This document shows positions 1 to 37,286 of a stretch of 37,912 nucleotides of DNA, in pieces. The notes beneath the pieces were generated by a model. That model searched no databases. It had not been told where the DNA came from and was given only the letters and a program-made list of their open reading frames with translations. Position 1 is the first letter of the stretch, and every line of letters begins with the position of its first letter. This stretch comes from Octopus bimaculoides. Its lineage: Eukaryota. The stretch is taken from assembly GCF_001194135.2 (NCBI RefSeq), contig NC_068982.1:108873161-108911072 (forward strand), read 5' to 3'. Position numbers and translations under genes: made by a program.

Positions 1-328
1 AGTGCCGCCTGGCTGGCCTTCGTGGGATTTTTGAGCGAGATCGTTGTCAGTGCCCCTGGACTGGCTCTTGTGTGGGTGGCACATGAAATGCACCATTTTG
101 AGCGTGGGCGTTGCCAGTACCGCCTGACTGGCCTTCGTGCGGGTGACACGTAAAAGCACCCACTATACTCTCTGAGTGGTTGGCGTTAGGAAGGGCATCC
201 AGCTGTAGAAACTCGGCCAAATCAGATTGGAGCCTAGTGTAGCCATCTGGTTTCACCAGTCCTCAGTCAAATCGTCCAACCCATGCTAGCATGGAAAGCG
301 GACGTTAAACGACGATGATGACGACGAT
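1..328 (+). mobile_element. Young RTE 3'-end repeat (tail GAT/GAC)
   Basis: Near-identical to copies at 10398, 28421, 33065 and 37287. Confidence 0.85.
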
Positions 329-13800: not shown

Positions 13801-16800
13801 TACTCATTTACAACTACCACATGCTGTCACAGATACACACACATACATATATGATAGGTTCCTTTCAGTTCTTGTCTACCAGATCCACCCACAAGACTTT
13901 GGTTGACTCAAGGCTATAATAGAAGACACTTTGCCTGAGTTGCCATGCAGCGGGACTGAACTCAGAACAATGTGGCTGGGAAGCAAAGTTCTTACTACAC
14001 AAATGATATGTGGGTGTGCTTAGAATTGTGTTATCTCATAAAGATTAAAACATTAAATTGAATTAAATTAATTTCTTACTTAAATACAAGGCTTGAAACT
14101 TTATGAAAAGGAACAGTCAGTTGTATCAACTTCATTATTTGACTGTATTATATTTATTGACCCTAGAAGAATGAGTGGTAAAGTTAACCATAGCAGGATT
14201 TGAACTCATCAAAATTAAGTTTAATTATTTATAAATAATACGTCTATTATCCGTTCTATAGTATTCAACCATTTTACTCTATATTCTTCACATGATATAT
14301 ACCAGCACTGCTGGACATGATAAAGAGGTGTGCAGATTCTTAAACTTTTACCAGAAGTAAAAGTTTAAGACCACTCTTGTTAAGGAGGTGAAATCGATTC
14401 ACATTCCGCAGTTGTCTGCCTGCCTTTTTTTTTTAACAGAATTAATCATTAAGATAATAATTGGTTCTTATCATTTGGAATGTAACTTTAATTAATTAAA
14501 ATTTAGTGGCCTATGATATCACAATATTATGTTAGCTGTACCAATTGCTTTTAGGCAGTAGATGTTCCTAAGATCTTTTTCCTCCAAGCATTCATCATCA
14601 TCATTTAACACCCATCTTCATGCTGGCATGGACTGGATAATTTGACAGAATCCAATAAGCTGGAGAACTGCATTGACCTCCAATGTCTGCTTTGGCATGG
14701 TTTCTGTGACTGGATGCCCTTCCTAATGCCAACCACTTTACAAAGTGTACTGGGTGCTTTTTTTTTTGACACTGGCACTAGTGAAGTTGCCAAGTAACTT
14801 CCAAAACAAAGAAAAGACCCTTTATTGAGTGGGGCTGTGGTAGAGAAGGAGGTGGTTTTATGCCTGTTGTTAAAAGGCTGAAGTATGACAGACACAGGTG
14901 TCTTGCTAGAGAAGTGATACCTGCATTATATAAGGGTGAGTGGAAGTGGCTGGAGAGAAGACAATGAGGTGGTGACAAGGTATCAGTATACTTACAAGAT
15001 GCAAGAAAGTGAATATAAGAGAGAATACAGACAAAAAATCAGTGGTGGATGTATAGATTCATTTGAGTGTGAGAGGTTCCTAACAAAATATCAACTTTTT
15101 GTTTCTTTCAGAATTACTTATTGAAGCCTTGTTTAAACCTGGTAGTCGTACCATCAACCGTGAGCACAAACCGAAGTATATCTATCTATTAGCATATGCT
15201 GCTAGTGTTAATGATACATACAAAAAAGTGAGTTTTCCCTTCAGATTTTCCTTGATACATTTCTGACAAATTTCTGTGGTATAAATTTAATTGACATTGT
15301 ATTGATCTGTAATATAAGCAACAAAGCTTTAATTAGTTAGAGGGAGGGTAGATTGCTGGTCATTTTTATTATTGAACTTCAAAACATGAAATAAAAAATT
15401 GTGACACAGGATTTTCAACTGAGAAGATAATTAAAATATAACTAAATATTTGAAGATATTTCATCTGATACTCAACTGACTCTGCCATTCATGATCCACT
15501 CATTTCTATATCACATGATCTTGTTAATCATTTATGAGTCTTTATGAAGATTACAATCTAGGTATTAGTGAGAAAAATTTGTGACACAAGTGAAAATGCC
15601 TGCTGGTAAATTTTCTGATTTTCAATGAAGTTTATTCAAATGTCTCTCAAATTGACTCACAAAAATCACTCATATTTTATTATGTGGTCCTTTTATATCA
15701 CTATAACACTTTATTGTTGAACCCCAGATCAGCCCTGATTGAACAAATTTGGTTCAGACTTTAGCATAGTCTTATTTTTAGGCAGTGCGTCTGAGACTAA
15801 ATTATACAATGTATTTTTCACTCTAATTCTTTTAATAACAATCCATCTGAGGTTAATCTTGGTTCTATGATACAAACTTCCTGTTTTAAAGTGATTTAAA
15901 TTAAAAACTTCCATCAAAATTTCACATTAATCTATGTTCCAAACATCAATAAAGAAAGATGTTTTACTAAATGCTTCATTTTAAAAAAAAATTCAATGAA
16001 AAAGAAACTTGTGTATTTCAGCAAAAATATTGTTGTTTAAAGACAGTAGGGTATTATTTTAGGGAGATTTGACTGCTATGTTTAGCACATTGAATGATCA
16101 TGTAGAGGCTTCTTTTGTTGGCTCACACATTTTTTTACTTGTTTATAGACGAGGGTTAAATTTACAGTTATAAGTCTTAGCTGGAAACTTCATCATCATC
16201 TATTTCAAACTGCTAAATGTTTGGCCTAGAACTCAAAAAATATGGTTTGAATTACTAAGAAATGTTAACACTAAATGTTATGTAATATTGTTTCTATTTT
16301 TTAAGGGTGTACGGAAGTATGTTAACAAAGATGAACTGAAACCAACTGTTCAAGCTTTGGAAAAAACCCAGACGTTATGTAGTGAAAATAAAGGTTCATC
16401 GGAATTAATTGCTGATATAAACACGTTGTTCCAATGTATACGGTAAATTTACATGCTTTTTTCTGAAACTTTTATTTGTTTGGTTAGGAAGAAGAACTTG
16501 TTGTCATTGCAGCTCCTCTGAAGGTTGTAAGATTGATGTACTTAATGTTTGTTCTAAATAGTTAATAGCTGCAGGGAAAAACATAGACTGGAAAGGTAAT
16601 TCAGAGGGTCAACATTTAGGAGAAGGATTTTTTTAGTGATAGGAATAGGTTTGGGTGGGACATTATATATGATGAGAGAAGACAAATGAGTTTGGAATTC
16701 TTGGCGTGAACTTGCCAGGTCAGATAAAGAGAGGCTACTGTAGTACAAGTTGGAAAGGTAAAAAAAGGATGCAACAAGCCTGGGCCAGAGGTTGGAATGT

Positions 16801-18366
16801 CTTGATAAGGGACTTCATGCCAATAAATTAGGTGCTCCCTCCCAAACTTTTCAGGGTGGGATGCAGTACTCCATCGTGGGTCTCACTTGACTTTGAAGAG
16901 GATTAGTAGTTTGGTATATTTATTATCATTTTCTGTGATATCATTTTCTGACTAAGCCGAAACTGTGTTGCCATTGGCTTTCATTGTAGTGTTTTATTTG
17001 ATAAAAATTTTACCTGAACCCCAATTACTGAATATGATTGTTCGATAGATGAAAGATTTGACAATCTCATTGTAAGTAGAAATTTTCTAGTCATTGGTAC
17101 TGTACTGTATCCTTTGCTAAAACATTTGTCCATTTTGTTTAACCATTTGACTGTGTAATTAAATTTCATGTTCATTCTGTAATGATGTTATCCACCAAAA
17201 TATAGAATTTATATTTTCTGATTCTGCAATATTTTTTCAGTATCTCCTGTAGGTATGGTTTTCATATCCACCACTAAAAGAATTTGATTCTTGCTCTGTA
17301 AGGAGATCATCATCATCATTTAACGTCCGCTTTCCATGCTAGCATGGGTTGGACGATTTGACTCTGGACTGGCAAGCCAGAAGGCTGCACCAGGCTCCAA
17401 TTTGATCTGGCAGAGTTTCTACAGCTGGATGCCCTTCCTAACGCCAACCACTCCGAGAGTGTGGTGGGTGCTTTTACATGCCACCGGCATGAGGGCCAGT
17501 CACACGGTACTGGCAACGGCCTTGCTCAAAAGTTGTTTTTTACATGCCACCTGCACAGGAGCTAGTGGCACTGGCAACGACATCGCTTGAATGATTTTCT
17601 AACATGCCACCAGCACAAGTGCTTGAAGGTGACGCTGGTAACGATTACGCTCAAATGGTGATATTTACGGGCCACTAGCACGGAGATATTTGATAAAATA
17701 TTTGAAAAAATTAAGAAAATCTACAAACATTCAGTTTGTGTTTTGTATCACAAATTATTTAAATTATGGATAATTAGATGTAAAATTGTTCAAAACTGTT
17801 ACATAATTCATTATCTTTTACAAAACATTGAATTTTATATATATATTGTATATATCTGTGTATCAGTACTAATAATTTATGACTCATATTGATTACATCT
17901 ATGCTGGGTGTCTCTCTAAATAGGTTGTAGAACGATTTCATACATATGATCTTATAGCAGATAGACTAACAATTTGCAATTAATTTTAGTCTGCCACGTT
18001 TATGCATACATAATATGACCATCTACCACATGGTGAAATTTTAACTTACAACTTATACATGGCAGTTGACGGAAGTAGACTGAGATTCAAAGATATGTTT
18101 TATATGACATCTGAAGATCATTTTTACTGTAACTTCTTATTTTATAACCATCATCATCATTATTGTCAATTTGATGTCTATTTTTCCATACCCAAATGAA
18201 TTAAACAAAACTCGCTGAAGAAGATTTTTAATGACTTTTACCTGCTTCCAAGCAAAGTAATATTTCCTCATGGTTGAAAGATTGGGAATGATTAGCAGTG
18301 CTTTTATGTCAGTGGCTCTTGTTCACAACCGTCATGTGATATCAAGACAAGGACATGCGTGCGTGT

Positions 18367-18419
<53 letters not shown>

Positions 18420-21400
18420 TACACTCACATGTGTTTCTTTTATTTTCCCTCTACCTAATCCACTCAAGACTTTGGTTGGTCTCGGGCTGTAGTAGAATAT
18501 ACTTGCCCTCAGTGCCACATAGTGGGACTGAATCTGAAGCCATGAGGTTGTGAAATGAATTTCTTAACTGCACAGCTAAGCTTGCATCATTTAGCATCCA
18601 TTTTCCATGCTGCATGGCTTAGACAGTTTGACTGAATTGATAAGCTGGAGAGATGCACCAGGCTCCAGTCTGCTTTGGCTTGGTTTCTATGGCTGGATGC
18701 CCTTCCTAATGCCAACCACTCCACAGAGTGTACCAGGTGTCTTTTACGTGTCACTGGCACAGGTGCTTTTACATGTCACTGGCATAGGTGCTTCTATGTG
18801 TTGCCATGGCAGATTTTTTGGGCTGTAGATGTAAAAGTCTAGTTAGAAATACCATCAACATTAAATAAATAATGGAGTAATAAATGCAGTAGTTAAGTTC
18901 TACTATTTAATTAAATTAATTATTAAAACTGTTGTAGAATAGTGGCCCAAGGAGAAAAAAAGTTTACCAATCTTCTAGCTATAGCAAACTACTTATCAAC
19001 AAAAAGTAAGTGTGGTGATTATGTTAAGACAAAAGTAACAGGTAAGAGTATGTAGAATTTTATGGAATGAAAAACATTATTATCAGATACTAATTTATCT
19101 CATTAAAAATCAGTAACATCTTTTTATAGAACAGTTTTCTTATATTTTCTTTCTCAACAGGTTTTCAGTAGTGGCAATGGGTGTTCTACGTTGGGTTGAT
19201 TATACAGTATCAGATAAAAGTTATTTCAAACTCAACACTGATCACACTCCTTTACATTTGGTTCTTGTGGATGAGGTAATTTAAACATATTTTTTGGATA
19301 ATTCTTTGTGAATATTAAACATATTGTTGACATTCACAATTGCATATGCTTAATATTCACAAAATATATTTTTGTGATAATTCTTTGTGAATATTTATGA
19401 TTAAATCTATATTCCTTTTGATGATAGTATAAGCTACTGATATGTGACCAGATGTCACTACCATTGAAGAGCAGTGAACTGTTGGTAAAGTGTTGACATA
19501 TAAATAAATGGCTTGACATATGACTCAAGCTGATGAGTTGGAACCAGAACTGTTTTAGTAAGATTATCATGAAGATAATCCATCTATTTGTGTTTCAGAA
19601 ATAAACTGGTTACGTGGTCAAGGTTGTGTATATTATCAAAATGAAATCCTAATTAACTATTCAAGGGCTGTACAATTCACACTGCTAAAATAGTAATCTA
19701 ATGGATAGATATTATCAGTGCAGGAAATGTATTACAGTGACTCATTTGTGTTTCAAGTTCAAGGGAAGTAGTTTGACTATATTCTGCATCTGTATATTTA
19801 TGTGTGTGTGTTTGTGTTTCTTTCTTTCTCAGTCTGCTTGTTTCTCATGCAGTCTCACTTGATCAAGGTCTAAAAATATACCTCAATGTTATCATCATAG
19901 GTATGGGTTGGATGATTTGTCAAAATCCAACATACCAGAAGACTGCATCACTCTCTGAAATCTGCTTTCTATGGTGTGCTAAGAACATTTTTTTTTCTGT
20001 GGCTTCAGCACTAGTGAGGACATCATAAAGCTTGCAACATTAAGATCCCTATTTGCTGAGTGGGACTACAGCAGAAATAGAGGTGGCTTTATGCTAGATG
20101 ATAAAAGTTTAGAGTATAAAAGAAGGGCCAAAGCAAGTTTCTTGTTGAAGAGATACATAGCTGGTTGCATAATAAAAAGGAGAGTGGAAGTAGTCTGTGT
20201 GGAGCTAGAAAGAGAAATAAAGATGGTGGTGACAAGGTATCAAGGTGGGCTCTGGGGGAAGAAGATCAGAAAGGGAGGCTGGATAGCAATTGCAAGTGTG
20301 TATTGAGAAAATAAGGGATGGTGAGAAATGGGTGTATTGAGGGATGGTAAGAAATGGGTGTATCAAGGGATGGTAAAAAATGGGGTTACTCCTTACTCTT
20401 TTACTTGTTTCAGTCATTTGACTGCGGCCATGCTGGAGCACCGCCTTTTTTTTTTTAGTCGAGCAAATCGACCCCAGGACTTATTCTTTGGAAGCCTAGT
20501 ACTTATTCTATCGGTCTCTTTTGCCGAACTGCTAAGTTACGGGGACGTAAACACACCAGCATCGGTTGTCAAGCGATGTTGGGGTGACAAACACAGACAC
20601 AAACATATACACGCACATACATATACATATATACGACAGGCTTCTTTCAGTTTCCATCTACCAAATCCACTCACAAGGCTTTTGGTTAGCCCGAAGCTAT
20701 AGTAGAAGACACTTGCCCAAGGTGTCATGCAATGGGACTGAACCCAGAACCAATTGGTTACATAGAAGGGCAAAGTGATCAATATAAAATGTGAATGATG
20801 CAGGACAATGTAAGAAAAGGGATGGATCTGGGTAGTGAAAAAGATAACTGGTATCATAGAAAAGATGATAAAATATGGCGTTCTACCCACATTTAATTAT
20901 AGCAACATAATATTGCAGTTGGCAAGTGATGGAGAGATCAGTGATAGAGAACGATGGGGTAAAGGGAAGATTTGGTAAGGAAATTAGGCGAGGGATGTTG
21001 TATATATAGACATTGTGTATGCTTTCGGACATTTCGTTTCACCAAGATGGGTGTGTCTTCTCAAGCACCACATATCAACAATTATCCTCGTCCCTTATCA
21101 TCTCCCTGAGATTCAAACTCCTGTTCAAGTTAATTCTGTAAATTTCCAGCTACATTTATGTATTTTAGAACTTTCTGAACTGATTATGTTAGTTAAGAAC
21201 ACCCAATGTATTCTTTCATCTGTATACTGTCATGAGGATGAATTTAATTTTATTCCATTGATTCTTTCACATGCATTTTCTTTCCTTTTCCTGTCTTGTA
21301 AAATTACTTGGAAACCTGACTTGTGACAGTAGCATGAAAAAACACCCAGTCCACTCTGAAAAGTGGTTGGTGTTAGGAAGGGCATCCAGCTATAGGCCCC

Positions 21401-24400
21401 ATGCCAAAACTGACATTTGAGCTCATTTGATCCTGTCAGTCTGTCCATTCCATGCCACAATGGAGAATGAATGTTAAATGATGATGTTGATGATGATAAG
21501 TACTTAGTCAGCTGAACATTTGATGCTTCCTCTAATCTTAATTACTTCTGTATGTCTTGCACACCAGAATTGCCACAATACCCCTACATCCTTTGTATTT
21601 GTTTGTACTCAACATCAAACTCGTTGAGCAATAATTTTCCACATAGTTTCCTCAGCACACTTCAGACTACAGAGATTTTGAAGATCTACTTCTTTGTTAA
21701 ATTTGTATTAACTACTGTTTATTGTGTTCTCCACAGATTGTAACTAGTCACATGCTGCTACATCAGAAAGCTCTTGACCTTTTAATTCGATTATTTGAAG
21801 CCTCTTATGAAGAACTTGATGTTTTAGTTAGAGTAAGTAATTTCTTAGCTCACAGTTTGTTTCTGTTTTCCTTTTCTTATATTATTAAAATGCTCAGCAA
21901 TTGAGCTTATTAATTCTCGTCTGCAAAGTTATCAATCCATATTTTTACCATTGGAAATATATTAAAATATACTTCTGTTTCTGTGTTGAACATGAAAATT
22001 AAATTCCAGTTTGGTTTCATTTATGTAATTTCTCTGCCATGAATGAAATATAATAATATATTTTAGAAATTCTTCTTGTTTTAAATTAAGAAGATTAGAG
22101 GTTTCTGTTTCACTTGTAATTCTTTCTTCTTCAGTTGGAACTAAAGAAAACTGTCCTCGATCGAATGGTGCATGTTTTCAGCCGAGGCTGTGTCATTCCC
22201 GTTGTGAGTTACATAAGAAAGTGTCTTGAGAAACAAGATACTGATATCTCTTTGATACGTCATTTTGTTACGGAGGTATGTTAAAGTGAACTAATTAATT
22301 TTGATTTTCATATCTTTGTAGGTGGTGAAGTGGCACAATCATTAGAACATTGGATAGAATGCCTTGCAATATTTATTCCAACTCTCCATCTCCTTAGTTC
22401 AAATCCCACCAAGATCAACTTTACTTTCATCCTTTTGGGAGGGCGATGGGGTAGCAGAGCTGTAAGAATACCAGATTCAGTGTCTGGTGGTATTTGCTTT
22501 CTGAGTTCTTTGCATTCTGAAAATCCTGCCGCGGCCTATTTGGGTGGTAGACTTAATCCATTGCGCAGATTAACACCACCACCTGGTTCTTTGGGTGCCT
22601 TTTGTGGAGTCCAATTTGAGCAAGCATTTAGGTCAGGTTTCTGGTTTGAGGTTTTCTTCCCTTCATTCCCACCAGTTTCAGAGGCTCTGGAAAGGGCCAT
22701 GTACACTGCTGTTTCTCTTAGTTATAAGATGAATACAAAATAATAAAAAGAAAAAAAACATGAAAACAAGAAATCCTCTTCATCATCATTCTTTTTATGT
22801 CATGTTTTTCATTCTGGTATGGGTTGGACAGGATGTTTTGAGATAGTGTTTTATGGCCAGATGCCTTTCTTGATGTCAATTTTTGTGACACAGGAAATTG
22901 TGTATTTATTTTAAAAGTCAATATATCCATGATCAATTTTAAAAATATATAAATCATATTTCTATCTGTCCTTTAATATATTGTGACCTTTTAATTGGAA
23001 AGTTGTGTAACATATGTTTAAATGTGTGGTTAAGAAGTTTGCTTCCCAGCTACATGTTTCCAGGTTCACCCACTGCATAGCACTTTGAGTAAGTGTCCTC
23101 TGCTATAGCCCCAGGCCCACCAAAGCTTGTGAGTTGATTTGGTAGATAAAAACCGAATGTGTGTGTGTGAGTATCTGTCTGCATGTGTGAATGAAAGGCT
23201 AAGTTGACCTCATTGAAATCTGAACTTGGTGCAGAGTCAGAATGAATTCTATAAAGCATTCCTTCTAATGCTCTGGTGACTCCAGTGTGTCCTTAGTCTT
23301 TTTTTTTTTAAGGCAGTAAAATGTGCTTTGAGGTAGATCTGGCTACTATCTCTAGCAGGTCAAGCGACTATGTAGAAGTGCCCTCATTAGCTCATTTAAA
23401 GAATGTTTACCCTTTTCCTGAGCATGTTTTATATAATCTATTTCCTACATGTTTCTTGGAGAGATTTAGCAAAATAACCAACTCTAATCCTTATTAAGCT
23501 GATGTTCAAGAAAAAGTCTCACATTAGATTATAATAGGATGTTGTAATTTCAGTATGAACACTTTAAAAGGAGGCTTTATATCAGAACTAGATGCAGTCT
23601 CAAGTGGGTGGATGTTATCAAAAAGGTTAATAAAAAATCTTCCATTGCTGGCTATTACAATCCATATCTTGTTACTTAATAAGAGCTTTCCAGAATATTC
23701 AGTCTATTGCAATAGTTTCTTCATTTTTCAATGACCTAATAGAAAAATGATTGTTGAGTTGATATAAATGTAAAATAGTTGATAAAATCTCAAATGCTAT
23801 TGCTAGAAAAAGTTATTTCTTTATATTCTTTTATATTTTTAGAAGCATTGTTACTGTAAGCCTAGAATACTGAATGACTGATCACAGTATGGTCCTATTA
23901 TAACAAAGCAAATACCTTAAATAATTTAATCTCTCTAAATTCTATTTATTCATCATGGTTGAGATGTCATGTGAAAATATTTGTCTCAATTATTCAGTTA
24001 CACTTTAACATTTTTGAATTGTTGGCAAATCAGTTGAGTTTTTAGAAAGTCAAAAAGAATGCCTCATAGTATTTGTCCAACTCCCTGCTTTCTGAGTTCA
24101 AATCCCATCAAAGTCGACTTTGCTTCATCTTTTCACGGTCAATAAAAAAAATAGTACCAATCCTAGGTTGTGGATTGGCAAAACTGCATAAGAATATTGG
24201 ATTGAATGCCTTGCAGTATTCATGCCTGCTCTTTGTGTTGTGAATGTAAATCCCATCTTGGGTTGTAAACTTAATCCATTGCCCAGTTTAATAACACCAC
24301 TTGGTAATTTGGGTACTGTTAATGGAGTTCACTCTGATGAAAGCTTTCAGGTCAGGTTGCTAATTGAAGTATATCTTCTTCTTCACTGTTCTACCAGTCT

Positions 24401-26846
24401 TGGAGGCCCTGTAAAAGCACATGGGCTCTACCATCACTTCTGATAAAAAAAAATCTCACCATCATTTTTCATTTTAAGTTATTAATTTTTGTATTTTAAC
24501 ACAAGCCTTTCCTGTAAAGGCATGTGTTAAAATTACTGATTGAATCAACCTAAGTATATTACTGTTATTTATTTGAGTAACTTTGAAATCATGAATAATG
24601 AAATTGATTTCAGTTTAATTTTAACACAGAAATATTATGGGTCATCATACAGAATACCATGTGGCTTCTTGTGCCAAAATCATCTTCACATCTTCACTTT
24701 ATTAACAAAAGTAGTGAAATGGCATGTAGCAGATCTTCTTTTATTTGTTTCAGTTTTTGTAGCAGATGTTCTTTTATTTGTTTTGTGATCATGTGTATAC
24801 TGTAGTCTATGATTTTGTCAGGGGCAGGAATAAAGAGCCAACGTGAAATTTTGCGTTAAGCTTGGGAAGTTTGCTACAGACATTGAGCATGCTTCGGCAA
24901 GCTTACAGCAATGAGGCAATGGGTTGTACACAATGTTTCGAATGGCACTGGTGCTTCAAAAGTGAAAGAAAGTCCCTGGAAGTTGATGAGAGATCTGGAA
25001 GACCTGCCATGAGTGTCGCCCATGAAAATGTAGTATTGTGCATTGAGAATTTGTCCCCACCAGGGCCAAATCGTTAGTCAAGAGTTCTACTGTAATGTTT
25101 TGAAGCGTTTGTGGGAGGGCATTCAGCAAAAATGACTGGATCTGTGGAGCATGAAGAATTGGATTCTTCACTGAGCTCTCCTCACTCGTGAGTTTCTCAC
25201 CAAAAGCAACATGGTATCACTTCTGCACCCACTCTATTCAGCTAATTTAGCACCTGCAGACTTCCATCTCCTCCCCAAGATGAAAAGTCAGCTCAAAGGT
25301 CACCATTTTAACTCTGTTGTTGAGATCCAGAGCGAATTGCAGAAGGTCCTTGACACACAGAAAAACAATTTCCAGGCTGGATTCCAAAAGGATTCCCAGG
25401 AATACTGGGACTGTTGTATTGCTATGCAAGGTGACTATTTCAAAGGAGATGATTTGAAAACTTAGGTAAATAAGTTATTTTTTATTAAACATAATTAGTC
25501 CGGAAACCTTGCTCAAGGTACCGTGCAGTGGGACTGAACCTGGAACTTTCTAATCTGACTAAGATACAGAGATTCTATTTCTGGTTAATTTTTTCACAGT
25601 GATGGTAGTGCTGGTGGTTGATGTTTGGTTATTAATAATGCATACAGTTAGGAATCAAACTTCTTACCATACAGTCATGTCTGCACCTACTAAAATCTAC
25701 CAGATATTAGGGTCTGTCAGTAAATATAGATTTGAAAGAATTTAATGAATGTTAAGATTGTATTCTGAGAAGTTTGGTGTGAAAATTTAAATGTATTTGT
25801 AGGTTCTTGATATGATTACACCTCCCTATACTGCTGAGTTTGTCCAGTTACTGTTACCTCTCATTGAAAATGAAGATATCACAGGTTCTTTAAAAGTTGA
25901 AGATGGAACTGATCCAGTCACAGAATTTATTGGTAAGTTATTTCTGAGTGATATTCTCCTAAATAGTTTTGACTGCTATTAAATAAATGATATCTTTATT
26001 ATATCAGATACAGAGACTTATTTGTGTGAGATAGAGAAATTTATGTTGGTGCATGTTAGTGTGTATTTGTGTGTATGTGTTGTTGTTGTTTAGCCCAGCT
26101 ATCCTTGGCAAAGAGGCCTTCCAGTCACATTTTGTCTTCTATTCAGGTGTGCATTCTCCTTTTAAAATAGTTGTGTGTCATTTGAAGGAGATATGGCTTC
26201 TATTTCTAGCAGGTCATGTTACCACATAGAGTGCATTGATTCAAGTATATATGTGTATATGTGTTACAATTAATGGTGCCTGACTTCATGAGTTTGTGAC
26301 TCTCTCAATGTATTACTTGATTTGATGAATGTCCTAAGTCAACGAGTGTATGAAACCTAATTTTGGAAGAATATTCTGCTAGTTAGTTCCATTACTTAAA
26401 GTTCTCATGTTGACCAATTTTGATAAAACGATTTTCTTTATCAATTATGGTTTTAAAAGCTACCAACTTTCATGGAATTGAAACAAAAATCAATACAAAA
26501 TCTTTATTTTACTCGGTTTGCATTCCAAAGTTTACATTGTTAGTATTTGAGTAATGGATATATGTGACATTTTACTTATAAACTCACATGAACTTTTAAT
26601 TCCTCTTTTTTATCAGAAATCTTATAGATTAAATCTTTACAATCTATAAATCCAACAATTACTTGGGATTCATAATGTAGAATCTCAGGAAATTTAAAAA
26701 CTAACCATCAAATTTTTAAATAATAAATTTGTGAAAAAAATTACTTTCAGTAAGACTTGTGTTTATTTTTTATGTTACTTCTTAATTTTCTATGCATATT
26801 TTCTTCTTCAGCTCACTGCCGGTCAAATTACATCATGGTAACGTGA
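659..26846 (+). CDS. NELFCD: Negative elongation factor C/D (NELF-C/D, TH1-like), spliced gene, 5'-partial, 14 coding exons
   Basis: The 14 exons join in frame through GT-AG introns: 1570 nt, 522 aa plus TGA. Translated motifs ([93 protein letters not shown]) match the NELF-C/D sequence as I recall it. Confidence 0.97.
1647..1757 (-). mobile_element. Young RTE 3'-end repeat, short
   Basis: Begins (CAT)n-CGTTTAACGTCCGCTTTCCATGCTAGCATGGG. Confidence 0.85.
1768..1848 (+). mobile_element. RTE reverse-transcriptase fragment [27 protein letters not shown]
   Basis: Direct translation. It overlaps and extends the motif at which the 9.7-kb copy breaks off. Confidence 0.8.
1859..1895. repeat. (TA)n microsatellite
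   Basis: Seen directly, next to the gap 1849-1858. Confidence 0.95.
1967..2076 (+). CDS. NELFCD: NELFCD exon b: (G)[36 protein letters not shown]
   Basis: Acceptor tcatag|, donor |gtacat, 110 nt. Confidence 0.95.
2391..2498 (+). CDS. NELFCD: NELFCD exon c: [36 protein letters not shown]
   Basis: Acceptor ttctgcag|, donor |gtaaga, 108 nt. Confidence 0.95.
2948..3251 (+). mobile_element. Young RTE 3'-end repeat
   Basis: Same consensus, (GAT)n tail. Confidence 0.85.
3295..3432 (+). mobile_element. Degenerate RTE 3'-end repeat
   Basis: Contains CCAGCTGTAGAAACC and ends GGACGTTAAATGATGAG. Confidence 0.6.
3947..4175 (-). mobile_element. Older RTE 3'-end repeat
   Basis: (CAT)n start; GGCTGGATGCCCTTCCTAATGCC core. 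Confidence 0.75.
4705..4857 (+). CDS. NELFCD: NELFCD exon d: [51 protein letters not shown]
   Basis: Acceptor tttcaag|, donor |gtaaaa, 153 nt. Overlaps track ORF 4705..4887. Confidence 0.96.
4958..5292 (-). mobile_element. RTE 3'-end repeat with three ~65-bp internal units
   Basis: Tail plus three GTGCCAC..GCAC..CCAGTCAG units. Confidence 0.8.
5385..5530 (+). mobile_element. Third SINE-like family (second copy near 30465-30600)
   Basis: Shared TGTGT(C/T)CTTGAGC(G/A)AG...TTTAAC...C(T)ATTCAGCTG / CTACTCAACTG. Confidence 0.5.
6329..6435 (-). mobile_element. Short RTE endonuclease fragment
   Basis: Homologous to 35972-36060. The minus strand reads [28 protein letters not shown]. Confidence 0.7.
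6835..6965 (+). CDS. NELFCD: NELFCD exon e: [43 protein letters not shown](R)
   Basis: Acceptor tttaag|, donor |gtaata, 131 nt. Confidence 0.95.
7592..7804 (+). mobile_element. TTAA-flanked MITE (piggyBac-like)
   Basis: TCAACCTTTTAGCATT ... AATGCTAAAGGATTAA inverted ends; homologous to 28925-29146. Confidence 0.65.
7967..8087 (+). CDS. NELFCD: NELFCD exon f: [40 protein letters not shown]
   Basis: Acceptor ttccag|, donor |gtaagt, 121 nt. Confidence 0.95.
8293..8337 (-). mobile_element. RTE 3' tail fragment cut by an N gap
   Basis: (CAT)n-TTAATATCCG...GGTTTGACAGGAGCTGG. Confidence 0.55.
8429..8700 (+). mobile_element. tRNA-headed SINE (head type A)
   Basis: Head AAGAAGCTTGCTT...GGTTTCAGTCTCACT...GCAAGTGTCTTCTA...AAAGCCTT; recurs eight times in the window. 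Confidence 0.7.
9135..9216 (-). mobile_element. Older RTE 3'-UTR fragment abutting the 5' end of the + strand LINE
   Basis: GCACCAGGCTCC...CTGGATGCTCTTCCTAACACCAACCAC. Confidence 0.65.
9215..10694 (+). mobile_element. 5'-truncated, internally deleted RTE-clade LINE (ORF remnant, 3' UTR, (GAT)n tail)
   Basis: Translates to [64 protein letters not shown] and [21 protein letters not shown]...EKTRQAK* (stop near 10092). It continues across the N gap into the common repeat ending GGACGTTAAACGACGATGATG. Confidence 0.9.
10154..10397. other. Assembly gap (others: 1849-1858, 8338-8404, 12059-12627)
   Basis: Runs of N. Confidence 1.
10766..10832 (+). CDS. NELFCD: NELFCD exon g: [22 protein letters not shown]
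   Basis: Acceptor taacag|, donor |gtaagt, 67 nt. Confidence 0.94.
11001..11187 (-). mobile_element. SINE head B plus Nin-like body (further copies near 14085-14210, 23190-23295, 32865-33000)
   Basis: TGGTACTTATTTTATTGAC...AAAGGATGAAAGGCAAAGTCAACC...GAATTTGAATTCAG. Confidence 0.7.
11250..11665. repeat. Purine-rich low-complexity block (similar blocks 20250-20385 and 20760-21000; pyrimidine-rich 31780-32370)
   Basis: Strong strand skew, very few C on the + strand. Confidence 0.6.
11676..12968 (+). mobile_element. Non-autonomous Helitron/Helentron-like element (contains a 569-N gap)
   Basis: 5' ACTAG followed by the hairpin ACCCGG-ctttgc-CCGGGT; 3' AAATTTGAATGAAATTGG...(CA)n(GACA)n...CATTTTTATATATATAGAT. 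Architecture recalled from Lep1/DINE-1-type elements; no TSD seen. Confidence 0.6.
12972..13010 (+). mobile_element. Possible solo Tc1/mariner-type TIR (TA-CAGGGTGAGCCAAAAGTC)
   Basis: Motif only; no partner end found. Confidence 0.25.
13609..14000 (-). mobile_element. SINE: head A, (CA)n, RTE-like tail
   Basis: Head at 13830-14000; CAGCTGAATGCCTTTCC tail at left. Confidence 0.7.
14592..15010 (-). mobile_element. Old-subfamily RTE-tailed repeat with purine-rich upstream part
   Basis: Shares the tail core; its upstream part resembles 19888-20250 and 35100-35500. Confidence 0.65.
15112..15227 (+). CDS. NELFCD: NELFCD exon h: (E)[38 protein letters not shown]
   Basis: Acceptor tttcag|, donor |gtgagt, 116 nt. 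Confidence 0.95.
16306..16442 (+). CDS. NELFCD: NELFCD exon i: [45 protein letters not shown](R)
   Basis: Acceptor tttaag|, donor |gtaaat, 137 nt. Confidence 0.95.
16540..16800 (-). mobile_element. Degraded CR1/L2-group LINE C-terminal fragment
   Basis: Minus strand [13 protein letters not shown]...LNYLSSLCF loosely resembles the YY..LCS.ELAS...LWNSLP..VFP tail. Confidence 0.3.
17306..17670 (-). mobile_element. RTE 3'-end repeat
   Basis: (CAT)n-TTAACGTCCGCTTTCCATGCTAGC consensus. Confidence 0.85.
18149..18586 (-). mobile_element. SINE: head A, long (CA)n, (CAT)n tail
   Basis: Same architecture as 13609-14000. Confidence 0.7.
18368..18415. repeat. (CA)n microsatellite
   Basis: Seen directly. 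Confidence 0.95.
18586..18800 (-). mobile_element. Older RTE 3'-end repeat
   Basis: Core GGCTGGATGCCCTTCCTAATGCCAACCAC. Confidence 0.7.
19161..19275 (+). CDS. NELFCD: NELFCD exon j: [38 protein letters not shown]
   Basis: Acceptor caacag|, donor |gtaatt, 115 nt. Confidence 0.95.
19888..20250 (-). mobile_element. Old-subfamily RTE-tailed repeat, degraded
   Basis: Similar to 14592-15010 (GTGGTGACAAGGTATCA shared). Confidence 0.55.
20386..20760 (-). mobile_element. Young SINE: head A plus ATAAGTAC/GGGGTCGAT body (Nin-domain-like)
   Basis: CpG-rich, little decayed. The minus strand reads GATAGAATAAGTACTAGG...GGGGTCGATTTGCTCGACT...GAAACAAGTAAAAGAG. Confidence 0.75.
21335..21498 (+). mobile_element. 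Older RTE 3'-end repeat
   Basis: GGTTGGTGTTAGGAAGGGCATCCAGC...GTTAAATGATGATG. Confidence 0.7.
21737..21832 (+). CDS. NELFCD: NELFCD exon k: [32 protein letters not shown]
   Basis: Acceptor ccacag|, donor |gtaagt, 96 nt. Confidence 0.94.
22135..22275 (+). CDS. NELFCD: NELFCD exon l: [47 protein letters not shown]
   Basis: Acceptor cttcag|, donor |gtatgt, 141 nt. Confidence 0.96.
22320..22740 (+). mobile_element. SINE dimer: head B with Nin-like body, then head B with body X
   Basis: AGTTCAAATCCCACC...CTTTCATCCTTT, followed by a body homologous to 24245-24440. Confidence 0.55.
23024..23185 (+). mobile_element. SINE head A copy
   Basis: GTGGTTAAGAAGTTTGCTTCCCAGC...CTATAGCCCCAGGCCCACCAAAGC. 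Confidence 0.7.
24030..24440 (+). mobile_element. SINE dimer: head B with Nin-like body, then head B with body X
   Basis: Same order as 22320-22740. Shared ACTTAATCCATTGC, AGGTCAGGTT and ACCAGT..GAGGC motifs. Confidence 0.55.
24828..25508 (+). mobile_element. Mariner transposase pseudogene, internally deleted, both ends truncated
   Basis: [48 protein letters not shown] and GDYFKGD* motifs; partial 3' TIR AGTCCGGAAAC. Confidence 0.85.
25508..25690 (-). mobile_element. SINE head A fragment interrupted by a 100-bp templated insert
   Basis: GTGCAGTGGGACTGAACCTGGAAC [insert] CAGTTAGGAATCAAACTTCTTACCATACAG. Confidence 0.75.
25803..25932 (+). CDS. NELFCD: NELFCD exon m: [43 protein letters not shown]
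   Basis: Acceptor ttgtag|, donor |gtaagt, 130 nt. Confidence 0.95.
26078..26235 (-). mobile_element. (AAC)n-tailed short repeat family (other pieces near 15715, 16036-16112, 23305-23395, 32768, 33612-33820)
   Basis: Shared G(A/G)GATTTGGCTGCTATTTCTAGCAGGT motif and a GTTGTTGTTTAGCCC end. Confidence 0.55.
26812..26846 (+). CDS. NELFCD: NELFCD terminal coding exon n: (A)[10 protein letters not shown]
   Basis: Acceptor cttcag|, TGA at 26844-26846. Matches the family C-terminus (AHCKSNFIMVN-like). Confidence 0.94.
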
Positions 26847-26915
26847 AAGATAATTTACCTAGTGGTAGTTAAAGGATGAGCATGAACTGGATTTCAAGAT
26901 AAACAAATGTCAGAA

Positions 26916-26921
26916 AATAAA
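26916..26921 (+). promoter_or_regulatory. Candidate polyadenylation signal (AATAAA) for NELFCD
   Basis: First AATAAA after the stop, 70 nt downstream. The hexamer is common in AT-rich DNA. Confidence 0.35.
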
Positions 26922-27717
26922 GCCGAACATAATGCCTTCTCTGAAGCCATTCATATCCATTGCAACAGAAATATCTGGAAAAATGTCAGTCTCTACTTAA
27001 CATCACTGGATAGCTGATTAGAAAAATACTAAATGTCTATGTTACATCGTTTGGAAAATTGACCAGTTTGATCATTATTGAGAATAATGATATTTTACCT
27101 CAAATATTTCTATTTTACTGTCAATTTAGTAAAAACAGAATCTTGGTTTCTATACTTTCTAATCTGACTGTAAGATACAGAGATTCTGTTTCTGGTTAAT
27201 TTTTTCACAGTGGTGGTAGTGTCGGTGGTTGATGTTTGGTTATTAATAATTCATAATGTTGTTTTTAATTTTTGTGAGTCCCTTATTAATTGGTTTATGC
27301 AAATAGTAAAAATCTAATAGTGATTTAAAATTTAGTTTAAATGAACTATTTTTGCCTGCCTGTTGTGTTTCTTTTTTTTTTTTTGTTACTGTGTGAAATA
27401 TAATTTTAATTCTTTAGAATTAGAATAGAATTATGATGCTATTTAAATCAATAGTTAACAAATAGTCTCTTATTTAAATAGCAACTACAGTGATGGTCAT
27501 GTTTATGATCTTGTGCATACATTAACTCCTGGTATTCTGATTGTTATAAGATTGAAAATTAGTAACTACAACTTAAGCCGGAAAATATGTCTCAATTCTT
27601 CAAGGGACCAACATTTGAAGTCTTTAGATTTGTTTCTGAGGACTGTACATATTTAAACTGTTATAAGTTTTTACATTCATTCCATTATTAGCTTTAGAAA
27701 AGTGTAGCCTCTGATGC

Positions 27718-28420: not shown

Positions 28421-28785
28421 GCAAAATCAGGATGGCACCTGTGCCCAGCGTCACCTTTCTGGCACTTGTGCCCGTGACATGTGTAACGATTTTCGAGCGA
28501 GATCGTTGCCAGTGCCCCTGGACTGGCTCTTGTGCAGGTGGCACATAAAATACACCATTTTGAGTGTGGCCGTTGCCAGTACCGCCTGACTGGCCTTCGT
28601 GCGGATGACACGTAAAAGCACCTACTACACTCTCTGAGTGGTTGACGTTAGGAAGTGCATCCAGCTGTAGAAACTCTGCCAAATCAGATTGGAGCCTGGT
28701 GTAGCCATCTGGTTTCACCAGTCCTCAGTCAAATCGTCCAACCCATGCTAGCATGGAAAGCGGACGTTAAACGATGATGATGATG
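28421..28785 (+). mobile_element. Young RTE 3'-end repeat (two internal units)
   Basis: Consensus match with (GAT)n tail. Confidence 0.85.
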
Positions 28786-29450: not shown

Positions 29451-30328
29451 TATGAGGTCTGACCAATAAGTATCCGGACTATTGCCATAGCAACAAAGCT
29501 AAAGCATGCAGAGTGAAGCCACTTGGTACAGATTGACCTTGAACTCTGCTGTGCATGCACATTGCTCTAACATTCTAGTTCACTTCCGCTGTTTACAGCA
29601 GTGCTTGGAAGGAAGGTTTTTAGCATGTGATTGTCGTGTTGACTTTAACAGAGAAAGTTGTCATGATGATACCTGCTCAGATGCCTATGCAAAGTTGCAG
29701 AAAGTGTATGGAGAGGAGTGTATGAGCTGCACACAAGTGTATGAGTGGTTCAGACGTTTCCAAGATAGCCGAAAAAATGTCGATATTGTCGAACATTCTG
29801 GGAGACCTGCAACCAGCAGAACTGAGAAAAACATCACAGATATGCATGCAGCTGTAAGGGGAAATTGTTGAGTCACTATCTGTGAGTTATCAGAGGATGT
29901 GCAGATTAGTTACAGTTCAGTTCAGTCCATTATCACTGAAGATTTGAGTATGAGATATGTTTCTTCCAAAACTGCTTTCAGCTGACCAAAAAGACTTTCA
30001 GGTTTCAGTTGCACAAGATCTTGATTGTGTCAAGAACAAAAACTTATTGAAAACTTTGCGTAGGCCTCTGATCAGGTATCGCCAAGCTTTTGGCAAAATT
30101 TGATGCAGATTCTCTGCTCAAGTTTCTCTGTCTTGGTCAATGTGTTGATCACACGCTACACACCTTCCTTCAAAGCACTGCTGTAAACAGCAGATGTGAG
30201 CTAGAATGTTAAAACTTAGTGTGCATGCCCAGCAGAGTTCAAGGTCAATCTGTGCCAAGCGGCTTCACTCTGTGCTTTAGCTTCATTACTATAACAATAG
30301 TCCAGATACTTATTGATCAGACCACATA
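29451..30328 (+). mobile_element. Non-autonomous mariner with ~165-bp terminal inverted repeats
   Basis: TA at both ends. Arms 29453-29617 and 30161-30326 are reverse-complementary; the interior encodes YAKLQKVYGEECMSCTQVYEWFRRFQ...HSGRP (transposase HTH). Confidence 0.88.
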
Positions 30329-31394: not shown

Positions 31395-31755
31395 CACAGG
31401 TGTGGCTGCATGGTAAGAAGCTTGCTTCCAACTACTTGGTTCAAGTTTCAGTCCCACTGCATGGCAACTTGGGTAAGTGGTTTCTACTATAGCCTTGAGG
31501 CAACCAAAGTCTTGTGAGTGGATTTGGTAGAGGGAAACTGAAAGAAGCTTGTCGTATATATATACATATATATATATGTATATATCTGTGTGTGTGTGTA
31601 GTACCTGTATTTTAAAGGACCACACTTTCTGTGTTCTATGTTTAAGGGTATGCATGTCTCTGGAGTGCTCACCACTTGCATGTTAATTTCACAAGTAAGT
31701 TGCTCTGTTAATCAGATCAACTGGAACTCTCATCATCATAACCAACAGTGCCAGT
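31395..31755 (+). mobile_element. SINE head A with microsatellite and body
   Basis: TGGTAAGAAGCTTGCTTCC...GGATTTGGTAGAGGGAAACTGAAAGAAGC. Confidence 0.75.
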
Positions 31756-32532
31756 TAGTTATGGTCCCTCTCTGCTGAACCACTTTCTATTGACTTTCTC
31801 ATGTCACTATATATCTCATTCTCCCCATACACTTGTCTTTTTCTCCACTCACTCTTGCAACTGTCCACCCATACGACATCTCTCTTTCTCCCATCTTTCT
31901 GTTTATTCTTTTATTATTCTGCTGCTCTTCACCTTTCTGTACTCTATTGCCAGTGCCCCTGATCTTTCCCTCAACTCCACCATTCACTACATTCCTCTGC
32001 CCTACCCAACCTCTGGTCATCATCTCTCATCCTTTCATTTAACTCGTATTTATCATTGACACCCTTCTGCCTCGATCCTTGTTCATTTAGTATATTCACA
32101 CCATGATGCCATTTCTAACTTACCCCTCTTTCTCTCCATATATTCTTGCAATCTCTACCCATGAAAATTTTGGCTCCAGGTCCACCTCATCACCATTATC
32201 ATTTCTGTATCCAGTTACAGATTAATTACTCACCCCAATTTCTGTATAGTATGAGCAGTCTTGTATCTCCTCCACAGCAAGACAATTGTTCTAGTTCCTT
32301 CCTTCATACTCTAACTTTTCACCAACTAACATAAAACTGTTTCCCCTCTCCATTGTAGTCCTTTTCAGTTCAACAAAATCTTAGTCTTGTCAGCTACATG
32401 GTGAATTCACTAGGATTGGTGGCACTAAAATAGCTCCGTCCTCAGACTGCATCATGCTCCTGTGTCAAATCATTCAAACCTGGCCAACATGGAAGACAGA
32501 AGTTAAAAGATGAGGATGTATATGTATGTATT

Positions 32533-32559
<27 letters not shown>

Positions 32560-32565
<6 letters not shown>

Positions 32566-33064: not shown

Positions 33065-33343
33065 TTGCCAGTGCCGCCGAACTGGCTCCTGTGCAGGTGG
33101 CACGTAAAATACACCATTTTGAGTGTGGCCATTGCCAGTACCGCCTGACTGGCCTTCGTGCCGGTGGCACATAAAAGCACTCACTACACTCTCGGAGTGG
33201 TTGGCGTTAGGAAGGGCATCCAGCTGTAGAAACTCTGCCAAATCAGATTGGAGCCTGGTGTAGCCATCTGATTTCACCAGTCCTCAGTCAAATCGTCCAA
33301 CCCATGCTAGCATGGAAAGCGGAAGTTAAACGACGATGATGAT
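33065..33343 (+). mobile_element. Young RTE 3'-end repeat
   Basis: Consensus match. Confidence 0.85.
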
Positions 33344-35500: not shown

Positions 35501-35589
35501 GAGGTTCGAACTCCATTATAAAAGTGGCAGGATATTGCCAACGGCTATTCTGTGTGTTCATCTGATCCTGGCAGAAATTTTTCTCATCT

Positions 35590-36172
35590 GAGAAAACCTG
35601 AATATATCATTTGCATCACAGGACTCCAGCAGTTTTGTTCCCTCCTCATTGCGGGAACCAAATCCACAGCCACCATGTACACCATGTTGTCCAACATACC
35701 CATTGAAGTCGTCAGCCACAAAGAGAAGGTCCCTGTCATTCATTGACGAGGTGGTCTGCAAGAGGTTGTCATAAAACTGGTCTTTTTGTCTATCAGGTAG
35801 CCCTGACTGAGGGGCATAGGCCAAGATAATGATTGCTAATCCATGTTGCAGCACCAATCTAATCTTAAGTATTCTATCACAGACTCTGACTACCTCGATT
35901 ACCTTATCAGCCCATTTCTCTGCAAGATGCCCACACCCTCAACCCCATTTGTTCCCTACCCAGAAAATCTTATATCTATGTTCTTTGCCTGTGAGGAACC
36001 TAGCAGAACTTCCTCTCCACCTTTTTTCTTGGATGCAGCACAAATCTAGATGTCTCCGTTCAAGCATCGCAACAATCTCACCAGATCTACCTTTCAATGT
36101 GCCAACATTAAGTGAACCAACTCGGAAGGTGTGGGCCCGTGAGACCCTGGGATAGGAGGACAGCAGCATCAT
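35590..36172 (-). mobile_element. RTE-clade LINE AP-endonuclease (5') remnant
   Basis: RVGSLNVGTLKGRSGEIV, DLCCIQEKRWRGSSAR, AYAPQSGL, LFVADDFNGYVG and GFGSRNEEGTKLLE are typical APE motifs; frameshifted. Confidence 0.88.
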
Positions 36173-36485
36173 GTACCTGAAAAGAAAGCTCGCATTTGGC
36201 AGAATTCATAAACATACAATGGCCTTCAACCTGCATATACTACACCATCAGTTTATGCACTGCATAATCACTACATTCCATAGGAGATAAACACTAAGTA
36301 GCATTTAAGTCACTGGAGGTGTTCAGAGGAAAGACGTCTGATAGAGGTCAGAGGATAAAGACTTCTGGTATAGGTGGCGGTGGTGGGATGGGTGAGCACA
36401 CCGTGAAACAGCAAACACTCTGGCTGTTGGTGTGAAAGAATAACAACAACAACAACAACAGCAATAATAATAATAATAATAATAA

Positions 36486-37091: not shown

Positions 37092-37286
37092 GAGATAGAA
37101 TTGGACATTTGCATTCTTAAGTAGAGCTATAACCAACAGTTTTTAGTCAGCCAAACTGTGATAAAACTAGATAAATGAATAGCAATAATAAATGAGCGTG
37201 AAAGAGAGAGAGAAGGGAGAAAGAGGGAGAATTGGATTGCATGTAGAGATCTTAAGTTTTCTCTAACATACGGCATGTATATATAT

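What the first reader, a model, noticed from the sequence alone, without database searches (positions are those of the whole stretch)
25545..27255. A 100-bp piece of the NELFCD 3' region is pasted into a SINE inside the gene's own intron
Seen: 25545-25644 matches 27154-27255 in the same orientation, with five substitutions and one 2-nt indel. The source starts about 310 nt past the stop codon. The intronic copy splits a SINE head exactly: GGACTGAACCTGGAAC | insert | CA(TA)CAGTTAGGAATCAAACTTCTTACC, compared with intact heads near 13950-14000. Junction microhomologies are AC (left) and CATA (right), with no TSD, no polyA and essentially no SINE loss. Inference: the intronic copy is the derived one, a templated repair patch from DNA 1.6 kb away or from the gene's own RNA (polymerase-theta or RNA-templated break repair).
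Basis: partly seen in the sequence, partly recalled or inferred. Interest (0 to 1): 0.7.

Follow-up and report, generated by a model that had tools for sequence, protein, structure and literature searches.

The report
Templated 100-bp patch inside an intronic SINE
A 100-base stretch lying just downstream of the NELF-C/D gene was copied, long ago, into a SINE in one of the gene's own introns, with the clean, microhomology-flanked junctions typical of error-prone break or fork repair: a tidy example of a known kind of mutation, not a new mechanism.

Summary
Window 25545-25644 and 27154-27255 are direct copies with 95 matches, 4 transitions, 1 transversion and one 2-nt indel. The gene is NELF-C/D (Pfam TH1, E 1.7e-116). 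Its stop codon is at 26844-26846, so the downstream copy starts 308 nt past it. Removing 25547-25640 lets the intronic SINE fragment align without a gap to five other SINE copies in the window. There is no target-site duplication, poly(A) tail, terminal inverted repeats or lost target bases. Microhomologies are AC on the left and CATA on the right.

The best reading is a microhomology-mediated templated insertion copied in cis from 1.6 kb downstream. It could have arisen by break repair or by a replication template switch. The pair diverges by 5%, against 18-28% between SINE copies, so the insertion postdates the SINE.

Three things stay open:
- Which enzyme acted (Pol theta or another).
- Whether the template was DNA or RNA.
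- The genome-wide copy number. No close relative of this genome was reachable in any collection, so neither the repeat test nor the empty-site test could be run. Proximity statistics cap the dispersed-repeat alternative at about 3%.

This is an ordinary class of event; interest is modest.

The parts
25545..25644 (+). Intronic (derived) copy of the 100-mer. 25547-25640 is the 94 nt that belong only to the insert.
   Evidence: 95/100 identity to 27154-27255. (removing 25547-25640 restores a gapless SINE).
27154..27255 (+). Downstream copy, the inferred donor, 308-409 nt past the NELF-C/D stop codon and in the same orientation
   Evidence: Its flanks match nothing else in the window.
25545..25546 (+). 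Left junction microhomology AC, shared by the SINE (..GGAAC) and the donor flank (..TATAC)
25641..25644 (+). Right junction microhomology CATA, shared by the SINE (CATGTGG in other copies, CATACAG here) and the donor (CATAATG). The looser pattern CAT-NNN-GTT is shared over 9 nt.
25497..25546 (-). Left half (plus-strand view) of the recipient SINE fragment. The SINE sense strand is the window minus strand. The SINE tail is missing to the left of about 25497.
25641..25690 (-). Right half (plus-strand view) of the recipient SINE fragment, i.e. its 5' head-side part
24847..25465 (+). Degenerate, internally deleted mariner-like transposase remnant just upstream of the SINE fragment (context only)
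   Evidence: 42% identity over 48 aa to the window ORF 29503-29868, which hits Pfam HTH_48 of the Mos1 transposase.
25803..25932 (+). Penultimate coding exon of NELF-C/D. The insertion lies 158 nt upstream of its acceptor site.
26812..26846 (+). Last coding exon piece ([11 protein letters not shown], then stop), with TGA at 26844-26846
26916..26921 (+). AATAAA hexamer, the only canonical poly(A) signal between the stop codon and 28266. It lies upstream of the donor.
27133..27191 (.). Potential hairpin at the donor: perfect 11-bp arms AAACAGAATCT (27133-43) and AGATTCTGTTT (27181-91). The copied segment starts at 27154, inside the loop.
   Evidence: I1. (DNA fold -10.8 kcal/mol, z -2.4, 6 of 200 shuffles as good).

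Best explanation
A DNA 3' end arose inside an old SINE fragment in the second-to-last intron of NELF-C/D, either at a double-strand break or as a nascent strand at a stalled fork. The SINE lies antisense to the gene. That end paired through 2-4 nt of microhomology with sequence 1.6 kb downstream on the same chromosome. About 96 nt were copied (27156-27251). The end then re-paired with the original site through the microhomology at the other junction, and the strand was sealed.

The result is a direct 100-nt copy with the donor left intact, no target-site duplication, no tail and no lost target bases. Both copies have since drifted apart by about 5%.

Shown: the two copies, the interrupted SINE, the form of the junctions and the relative age.

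Inferred: that the nearby copy is the donor, that the template was DNA, and the pathway. The pathway could be polymerase-theta-type synthesis-dependent end joining or a FoSTeS/MMBIR-type template switch. The exact return to the next base of the SINE fits a template switch slightly better.
For: - Two copies only in the window, 95/100 identical, in direct orientation, 1,609 bp apart.
- The intronic copy interrupts a repeat that is contiguous in five other copies. Removing 94 nt restores a gapless alignment.
- Junction microhomology is AC and CATA. The chance of at least 2 plus at least 4 nt is about 4e-4.
- No TSD, poly(A) or TIRs are present, and no Rfam family matches.
- Pair divergence is K2P 0.052, against 18-28% between SINE copies. 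The insertion is therefore much younger than the SINE and was not part of it at integration.
- Under a dispersed-family model, exactly one other copy within 1.7 kb and none in the other 34 kb has probability at most 0.033 at any density, and 1e-3 at 1,000 copies.
- The features match published class 2 templated sequence insertions, which have no TSD, no poly(A) and junction microhomology (PMC5110952). They also match germline templated inserts copied from sequence near the break (PMC4490562).
Against: - Genome-wide copy number of the 100-mer is unknown, and no orthologous empty site could be examined.
- 100 nt copied from 1.6 kb away is longer and more distant than typical Pol-theta templated inserts. 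Those are short and come from 'close proximity' to the break. MMBIR searches have only looked within 100 bp.
- Nothing in the window shows that the downstream copy is in its original context.
- The microhomologies are short, and their significance was judged after the fact.
- The window comes from a draft assembly with gaps, although none is near the feature.
Confidence: 0.65

Rival explanations
1. The anatomy is the same, but the template was RNA. This would be the gene's own nascent or read-through transcript, reverse-transcribed at the break by a polymerase with RT activity or by a LINE RT acting without its endonuclease. That is class 2 TSI in the strict sense.
For: - The donor and the break site lie in one transcription unit, and the copy is in the sense orientation.
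- The bottom-strand 3' end at the right junction (..TATG-3') could prime on CAUA of the RNA, which gives the observed orientation.
- Class 2 TSIs are reported to be RNA-derived (PMC5110952).
Against: - The only AATAAA after the stop is at 26916, upstream of the donor. Mature mRNA made from that site would not contain the donor, and only read-through RNA or a longer 3' UTR isoform would.
- The copy carries no A-to-G (editing-type) differences relative to the donor. At the two A/G sites the copy has A and the donor has G.
- No splice junction or poly(A) can mark an RNA origin here, so the idea cannot be tested from sequence.
Confidence: 0.12
2. The 100-mer belongs to a dispersed repeat family, or both copies derive from a third locus. 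The downstream copy would then not be the donor, and the proximity would be coincidence or local hopping.
For: - The window is packed with repeats.
- Uniqueness of the 100-mer could not be tested genome-wide.
- Other two-copy families exist in the window, for example 6343-6431 against 35973-36061.
Against: - The proximity probability is at most 0.033 at any density.
- 95% identity is far higher than for the other two-copy pairs in the window, which are 73-85%.
- The insert has no TIRs, TSD or tail, so it is not a canonical transposition even under this model.
- The flanks of the downstream copy match nothing else in the window.
Confidence: 0.15
3. Assembly or gap-filling artefact: the 100 nt were placed in the intron by mistake.
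For: The window is a draft scaffold with four N runs.
Against: - The copies differ at 5 substitutions and a 2-nt indel, so the intronic copy is not a misplaced duplicate of the downstream one.
- The junctions fall at single-base precision inside a SINE and carry microhomology.
- The nearest gap is 13 kb away.
Confidence: 0.04
4. A chimeric retrocopy: the LINE reverse transcriptase that was integrating the SINE jumped to another RNA and back, so the 100-mer entered together with the SINE.
For: Template-switch chimeras are known for LINE reverse transcriptases (general knowledge).
Against: - The SINE sense strand is the window minus strand, while the 100-mer is in the sense of the gene on the plus strand. 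An antisense transcript would be needed as template.
- The 100-mer pair is about four times less diverged than the SINE copies are from one another.
- A double switch that returns to the very next SINE base is unlikely.
Confidence: 0.02

Closest known systems
Class 2 templated sequence insertions (TSIs and TSIPs; Onozawa and Aplan, PMC5110952)
   Same: A copy of another genomic sequence is inserted and the donor is kept. There is no TSD, no poly(A) and no LINE target motif, and the junctions carry microhomology. The event was inherited through the germline.
   Different: The human cases mostly come from distant loci or other chromosomes and are argued to be RNA-derived. Here the donor is 1.6 kb away in cis, and a DNA template is at least as likely.
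Polymerase-theta-mediated end joining with templated inserts (TMEJ, SD-MMEJ; PMC4490562, PMC2943611)
   Same: Priming uses 1-4 nt of homology. The template lies near the break on the same molecule. The process contributes to natural germline indels.
   Different: Typical inserts are a few to a few tens of nucleotides, are copied from within tens of bp, and usually come with a small deletion. Here 96-100 nt were copied from 1.6 kb away with no deletion.
Replicative template switching (FoSTeS and MMBIR templated insertions; PMC8421209)
   Same: A microhomology-guided switch to a nearby template and back leaves a short insertion that duplicates nearby sequence. A clean return to the original template is possible.
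   Different: The cases described are mostly in cancer or in pathogenic complex rearrangements, and they were searched for only within about 100 bp. This is a single, simple, old germline event.
Filler DNA at T-DNA and CRISPR break junctions in plants (for example PMC10923293)
   Same: Templated filler, sometimes tens to hundreds of bp long, is copied from sequence near the junction with microhomology.
   Different: That setting is experimental or T-DNA-based and in plants. I did not check the size and distance figures in those papers.

Membership tests
Templated insertion at a break or fork (class 2 TSI, TMEJ or MMBIR type) | The insert is a copy of another genomic sequence and the donor is retained | tested here: met
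   95/100 identity between 25545-25644 and 27154-27255, with both copies present
Templated insertion at a break or fork (class 2 TSI, TMEJ or MMBIR type) | No target-site duplication, no poly(A) tail, no terminal inverted repeats | tested here: met
   The junctions read GGAAC|TTTCT.. and ..AATAATG|CATAC. The gapless SINE alignment after in-silico excision shows neither duplication nor loss.
Templated insertion at a break or fork (class 2 TSI, TMEJ or MMBIR type) | Microhomology between donor flank and recipient at the junctions | tested here: met
   AC on the left and CATA on the right. The joint chance is about 4e-4.
Templated insertion at a break or fork (class 2 TSI, TMEJ or MMBIR type) | An empty (pre-insertion) site exists | tested here: inconclusive
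   Only a proxy was available: five paralogous SINE copies are contiguous across the site. An orthologous or allelic empty site could not be fetched.
Templated insertion at a break or fork (class 2 TSI, TMEJ or MMBIR type) | The donor is single-copy and not a mobile family | not testable with these tools
   The 100-mer is unique within the 37.9-kb window. The metagenome scan found nothing for the 100-mer, but it also found nothing for the high-copy SINE control, so that negative result says nothing.
Templated insertion at a break or fork (class 2 TSI, TMEJ or MMBIR type) | Dependence on Pol theta, or on RT or an RNA template | not testable with these tools
   This needs genetics or biochemistry. 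The sequence does not discriminate between them.
LINE-mediated retroposition (class 1 TSI, processed retrocopy) | TSD of at least 5 bp, a 3' poly(A) and a TTTT/A-like target | tested here: not met
   No duplicated target and no A-run at either end. The target is GGAAC|CATG.
DNA transposon or MITE | Terminal inverted repeats and a TSD, with several copies | tested here: not met
   The ends TTTCTAATCTG.. and ..TTATTAATAATG are not inverted repeats. There is no TSD, and only two copies are in the window.
Helitron | Insertion between A and T without a TSD, with ends 5'-TC...CTRR-3' | tested here: not met
   The insertion lies between C and C, and the ends are TTTC.. and ..AATG. The definition of the family is from general knowledge.
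NELF-C/D (TH1) gene | Match to Pfam TH1 above the curated cut-off, reaching the C-terminus | tested here: met
   PF04858 at 390.7 bits against a cut-off of 24, E 1.7e-116, up to profile position 578/579. The best homologues are NELF-C/D of fish and bivalves.
SINE (the recipient repeat) | Short dispersed repeat with a pol III-type head and a simple-repeat tail | tested here: inconclusive
   Six copies of about 130-200 nt are in the window, with (CA)n or (TA)n at the tail side. A box-B-like GGTTCAGTCCC lies on the minus strand (read by eye). ARAGORN and the Rfam tRNA model give no hit. I assign it to the octopod SINEs from memory only.

The most novel reading that the evidence does not exclude
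The patch was reverse-transcribed from the gene's own nascent or read-through transcript at a break in the intron. That would make it a natural, germline-fixed case of transcript-templated repair in cis.

A variant reading concerns the cause of the lesion. The break or fork stall may have been provoked by the SINE's pol III box B acting as a fork barrier, because the insert sits about 7 nt from the box-B-like motif. The donor strand may have been exposed in the loop of a hairpin, because the copy starts in the loop of the hairpin at 27133-27191.
Probability: 0.1. Interest if true: 0.55.

Novelty: new member of a known kind. Interest (0 to 1): 0.3.

Why it matters
If the local-donor reading holds, this is a clean, datable natural example of a long (about 100 nt) templated insertion copied from 1.6 kb away in an invertebrate germline. 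That is at the upper end of what is usually ascribed to Pol-theta-type repair, and such events are easy to miss because most detection pipelines look for templates within about 100 bp.

A genome-wide count of such interrupted-repeat patches could measure how much this pathway contributes to intron growth in a repeat-rich genome. Old SINE copies serve as built-in empty-site controls for that count.

On its own it has no evident effect on the gene. It lies 158 nt upstream of the acceptor, but it does bring a 3'-splice-site-like TTTTTTCACAG motif into the intron.

Tried and rejected
Attempts to reach related genomes all failed:
- A protein search with 290 aa of NELF-C/D exons returned no close relative. 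The best hits were 52-77% identical, from fish, bivalves and unnamed transcripts.
- A search with the neighbouring mariner-remnant ORF, meant to catch the orthologous locus 80 bp from the insertion, gave 1 candidate and no hit.
- Exact look-ups of two window ORFs (25211-25465 and 25812-25982) were not on record.
- A metagenome scan for a 23-mer conserved in both copies found nothing. The control scan for a 20-mer of the high-copy SINE also found nothing, so the negative result is uninformative.

Ideas rejected:
- A small RNA gene in the 100-mer. Rfam finds nothing, and the 100-mer alone does not fold better than shuffles (z -0.6 and +0.5).
- A MITE, Helitron or LINE-mediated insertion. The junctions do not fit.
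- A SINE subfamily that carries the module. Five other copies lack it.
- An RT template-switch chimera. The strands are opposite and the ages differ.
- Mariner ends as the cause of the break. No TIRs were found.

Two calls added nothing. The sigma-70 promoter and terminator scan is irrelevant to a eukaryotic locus. The sub-threshold Rfam hits (mir-297 and others) fall on (CA)n microsatellites.

Full report
**1. The observation**

A self-comparison of the window finds 25545-25644 and 27154-27255 as a same-strand pair, 93.1% identical over 102 columns, E 4e-39. A global alignment gives 95 matches, 4 transitions, 1 transversion and one 2-nt gap (TG, present only in the downstream copy), K2P 0.052. 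Nothing else in the 37.9-kb window resembles the 100-mer, apart from a 23-nt chance match inside an exon (E 0.03). The sequence is not low-complexity, has no terminal inverted repeats, matches no Rfam family and does not fold better than shuffled versions.

**2. The setting**

The plus strand carries a NELF-C/D (TH1) gene.
- Exon pieces at about 615-773, 1936-2091, 2355-2516, 4700-4870, 16300-16443, 19160-19276, 21720-21810, 22130-22281, 25803-25932 and 26812-26846 were read from the translations.
- A concatenate of eight of these pieces (all but those at about 4700-4870 and 19160-19276) scores 390.7 bits (E 1.7e-116) on Pfam TH1, up to profile position 578 of 579.
- The nearest proteins in the large database are NELF-C/D of fish, bivalves and other animals.
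- The last two coding exons have canonical splice sites, and the stop TGA is at 26844-26846.
- The only AATAAA or ATTAAA between the stop and 28266 is at 26916. Whether the downstream copy lies in a 3' UTR or just beyond the proximal poly(A) site is open.

**3. The recipient**

On either side of the intronic copy lie the two halves of a short dispersed repeat. Five further copies of that repeat are in the window: 13835-14001, 20591-20759, 18379-18574, and in reverse 23023-23157 and 31403-31597. These copies carry (CA)n or (TA)n on one side. On the window minus strand they have a box-B-like GGTTCAGTCCC, so the sense strand of the element at 25497-25690 is the minus strand, antisense to the gene.

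I recognise the sequence from memory as the common octopod SINE. No tool confirmed a tRNA origin, and the organism was not identified.

When 25547-25640 is removed, the intronic fragment aligns to the five other copies with no gap at the junction: GGGACTGAACCTGGAAC·CATACAGTTAGGAATCAAACTTCTTA against the consensus GGGACTGAACCTAGAAC·CATGTGGTTGGGAAGCAAAGTTCTTA. The insertion therefore neither duplicated nor deleted a single target base.

The fragment lacks its tail to the left of about 25497. There a degenerate, internally deleted mariner-like remnant ends (24847-25465). No mariner ends could be defined.

**4. The junctions**

- Left: recipient ..CTGGAAC and donor ..TCTATAC share AC.
- Right: the donor reads AATAATT-CATA-ATGTT and the recipient AATAATG-CATA-CAGTT. 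CATA is shared with the SINE, which reads CATGTGG in other copies. A looser CAT-NNN-GTT is common to the donor and the SINE.
- The G at 25640 is not SINE sequence, so the copied tract runs at least to that base.
- In this base composition, shared runs of at least 2 nt and at least 4 nt at two random junctions occur with probability about 4e-4. That is a post hoc figure but a telling one.
- There is no A-run, no TSD, no TTTT/A target and no A|T target.

**5. Direction and age**

The intronic copy is an insertion relative to a repeat family, so it is derived with respect to its own site. The two copies differ by 5%, whereas copies of the SINE differ from one another by 18-28%. The 100-mer therefore arrived long after the SINE and was not part of it at integration. 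That, together with the opposite strands of the SINE and the 100-mer, argues against a reverse-transcriptase template-switch chimera.

**6. Is the neighbour the donor?**

I could not count the 100-mer in the genome.
- The protein database holds no close relative of this gene or of the neighbouring transposon remnant.
- Exact look-ups of two window ORFs found nothing.
- The metagenome collection lacks even the high-copy SINE.

What can be said comes from position. Suppose the two copies were independent members of a dispersed family of any density. Exactly one other copy within 1.7 kb and none in the remaining 34 kb then has probability at most 0.033. The maximum falls near one copy per 38 kb. 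For 1,000 copies in a genome of about 2.7 Gb, a size I took only for illustration, the probability is about 1e-3. The pair is also far more alike (95%) than the other two-copy repeats in the window (73-85%). Even if a family existed, the intronic piece shows none of the marks of transposition, so it would still be a captured patch and only the donor would change.

**7. Mechanism**

The anatomy is that of a microhomology-mediated templated insertion.
- *Break version.* A 3' end within the SINE (..GGAAC-3') pairs with the complement of ..AC at 27154-55 and is extended for about 96 nt. It then dissociates and anneals through CATA to the other end.
- *Fork version.* A nascent strand leaves its template after GGAAC, copies the same tract, and returns through CATA to the very next base. 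The lack of any target loss fits the fork version a little better, but clean break repair is also documented.
- *RNA version.* The bottom-strand end ..TATG-3' primes on CAUA of a sense transcript. This is possible only if transcription runs past the AATAAA at 26916. At the two A/G differences the copy has A and the donor G, so there is no editing-type footprint.

The copied tract begins in the loop of a potential hairpin with perfect 11-bp arms (27133-43 and 27181-91; z -2.4). A single-stranded loop could favour annealing, but this is weak and may be coincidence.

**8. Comparison with what is known**

- The features are those listed for class 2 templated sequence insertions in humans: no TSD, no poly(A), microhomology (PMC5110952).
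- They also match the templated inserts of polymerase-theta end joining that shape natural indels in C. elegans (PMC4490562).
- MMBIR-type templated insertions (PMC8421209) are the replicative counterpart.
- This case differs in scale. About 100 nt from 1.6 kb away is longer and more distant than typical TMEJ inserts, and much nearer than the mostly interchromosomal human TSIs.
- It fails the tests for LINE-mediated, MITE and Helitron insertion.

**9. Verdict**

It is a new member of a known kind and of modest interest. Its main value is as a well-preserved example and as a template for a genome-wide search.

Noticed in passing
window 26-321, 2950-3268, 10399-10693, 17307-17587, 28488-28783, 33065-33342, 37286-37586 and weaker copies: A repeat of about 300 bp is present at least nine times in 38 kb at 84-95% identity, on both strands. 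It is a much younger and more abundant family than the SINE that received the patch.
   Followed up: no
window 29451-30328: A mariner-like element has inverted ends of about 210 bp (29451-29660 and 30119-30328, 83%). Its ORF at 29503-29868 hits the Mos1 transposase HTH domain (Pfam HTH_48, E 7.5e-07).
   Followed up: partly
window 24847-25465: A degenerate, internally deleted mariner-like transposase remnant lies in the same intron and ends about 30 nt before the truncated SINE. It gives no Pfam hit itself but is 42% identical over 48 aa to the element at 29503-29868. No terminal repeats were found.
   Followed up: partly
window 25584-25598 and 27195-27209: Both copies of the 100-mer contain a 3'-splice-site-like motif, TTAATTTTTTCACAG|TG. 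The intronic copy puts it 205 nt upstream of the real acceptor at 25802.
   Followed up: no
window 26916-26921: AATAAA lies 70 nt after the stop codon, and the next poly(A) hexamer is not until 28266. The gene may therefore end before the donor segment.
   Followed up: partly
window 19283-19316 and 19362-19395: A short local duplication (34 nt, 91%) lies in the intron just after the donor splice site of the exon that ends near 19276. A palindromic ttgtgaatatt/aatattcacaa sits between the copies. This may be another small templated or slippage event.
   Followed up: no
window 9081-10090 (+) and 35561-36205 (-): These ORFs look by eye like fragments of LINE reverse transcriptase or endonuclease, but Pfam gave no significant hit at E 0.01.
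   Followed up: partly
window 22319-22701 and 24056-24423: Two direct copies (73-78%) of another repeat lie within the same intron, upstream of the mariner remnant.
   Followed up: no
window 18356-18420 and 32500-32563: Sub-threshold Rfam mir-297 hits (38 bits against a gathering score of 90) fall on (CA)n microsatellites at SINE tails and are artefacts.
   Followed up: yes
window 1849-1858, 8338-8404, 10154-10397, 12059-12627: Four runs of N mark assembly gaps. NELF-C/D exons may be missing there. The protein database returned no near-identical NELF-C/D at all.
   Followed up: partly
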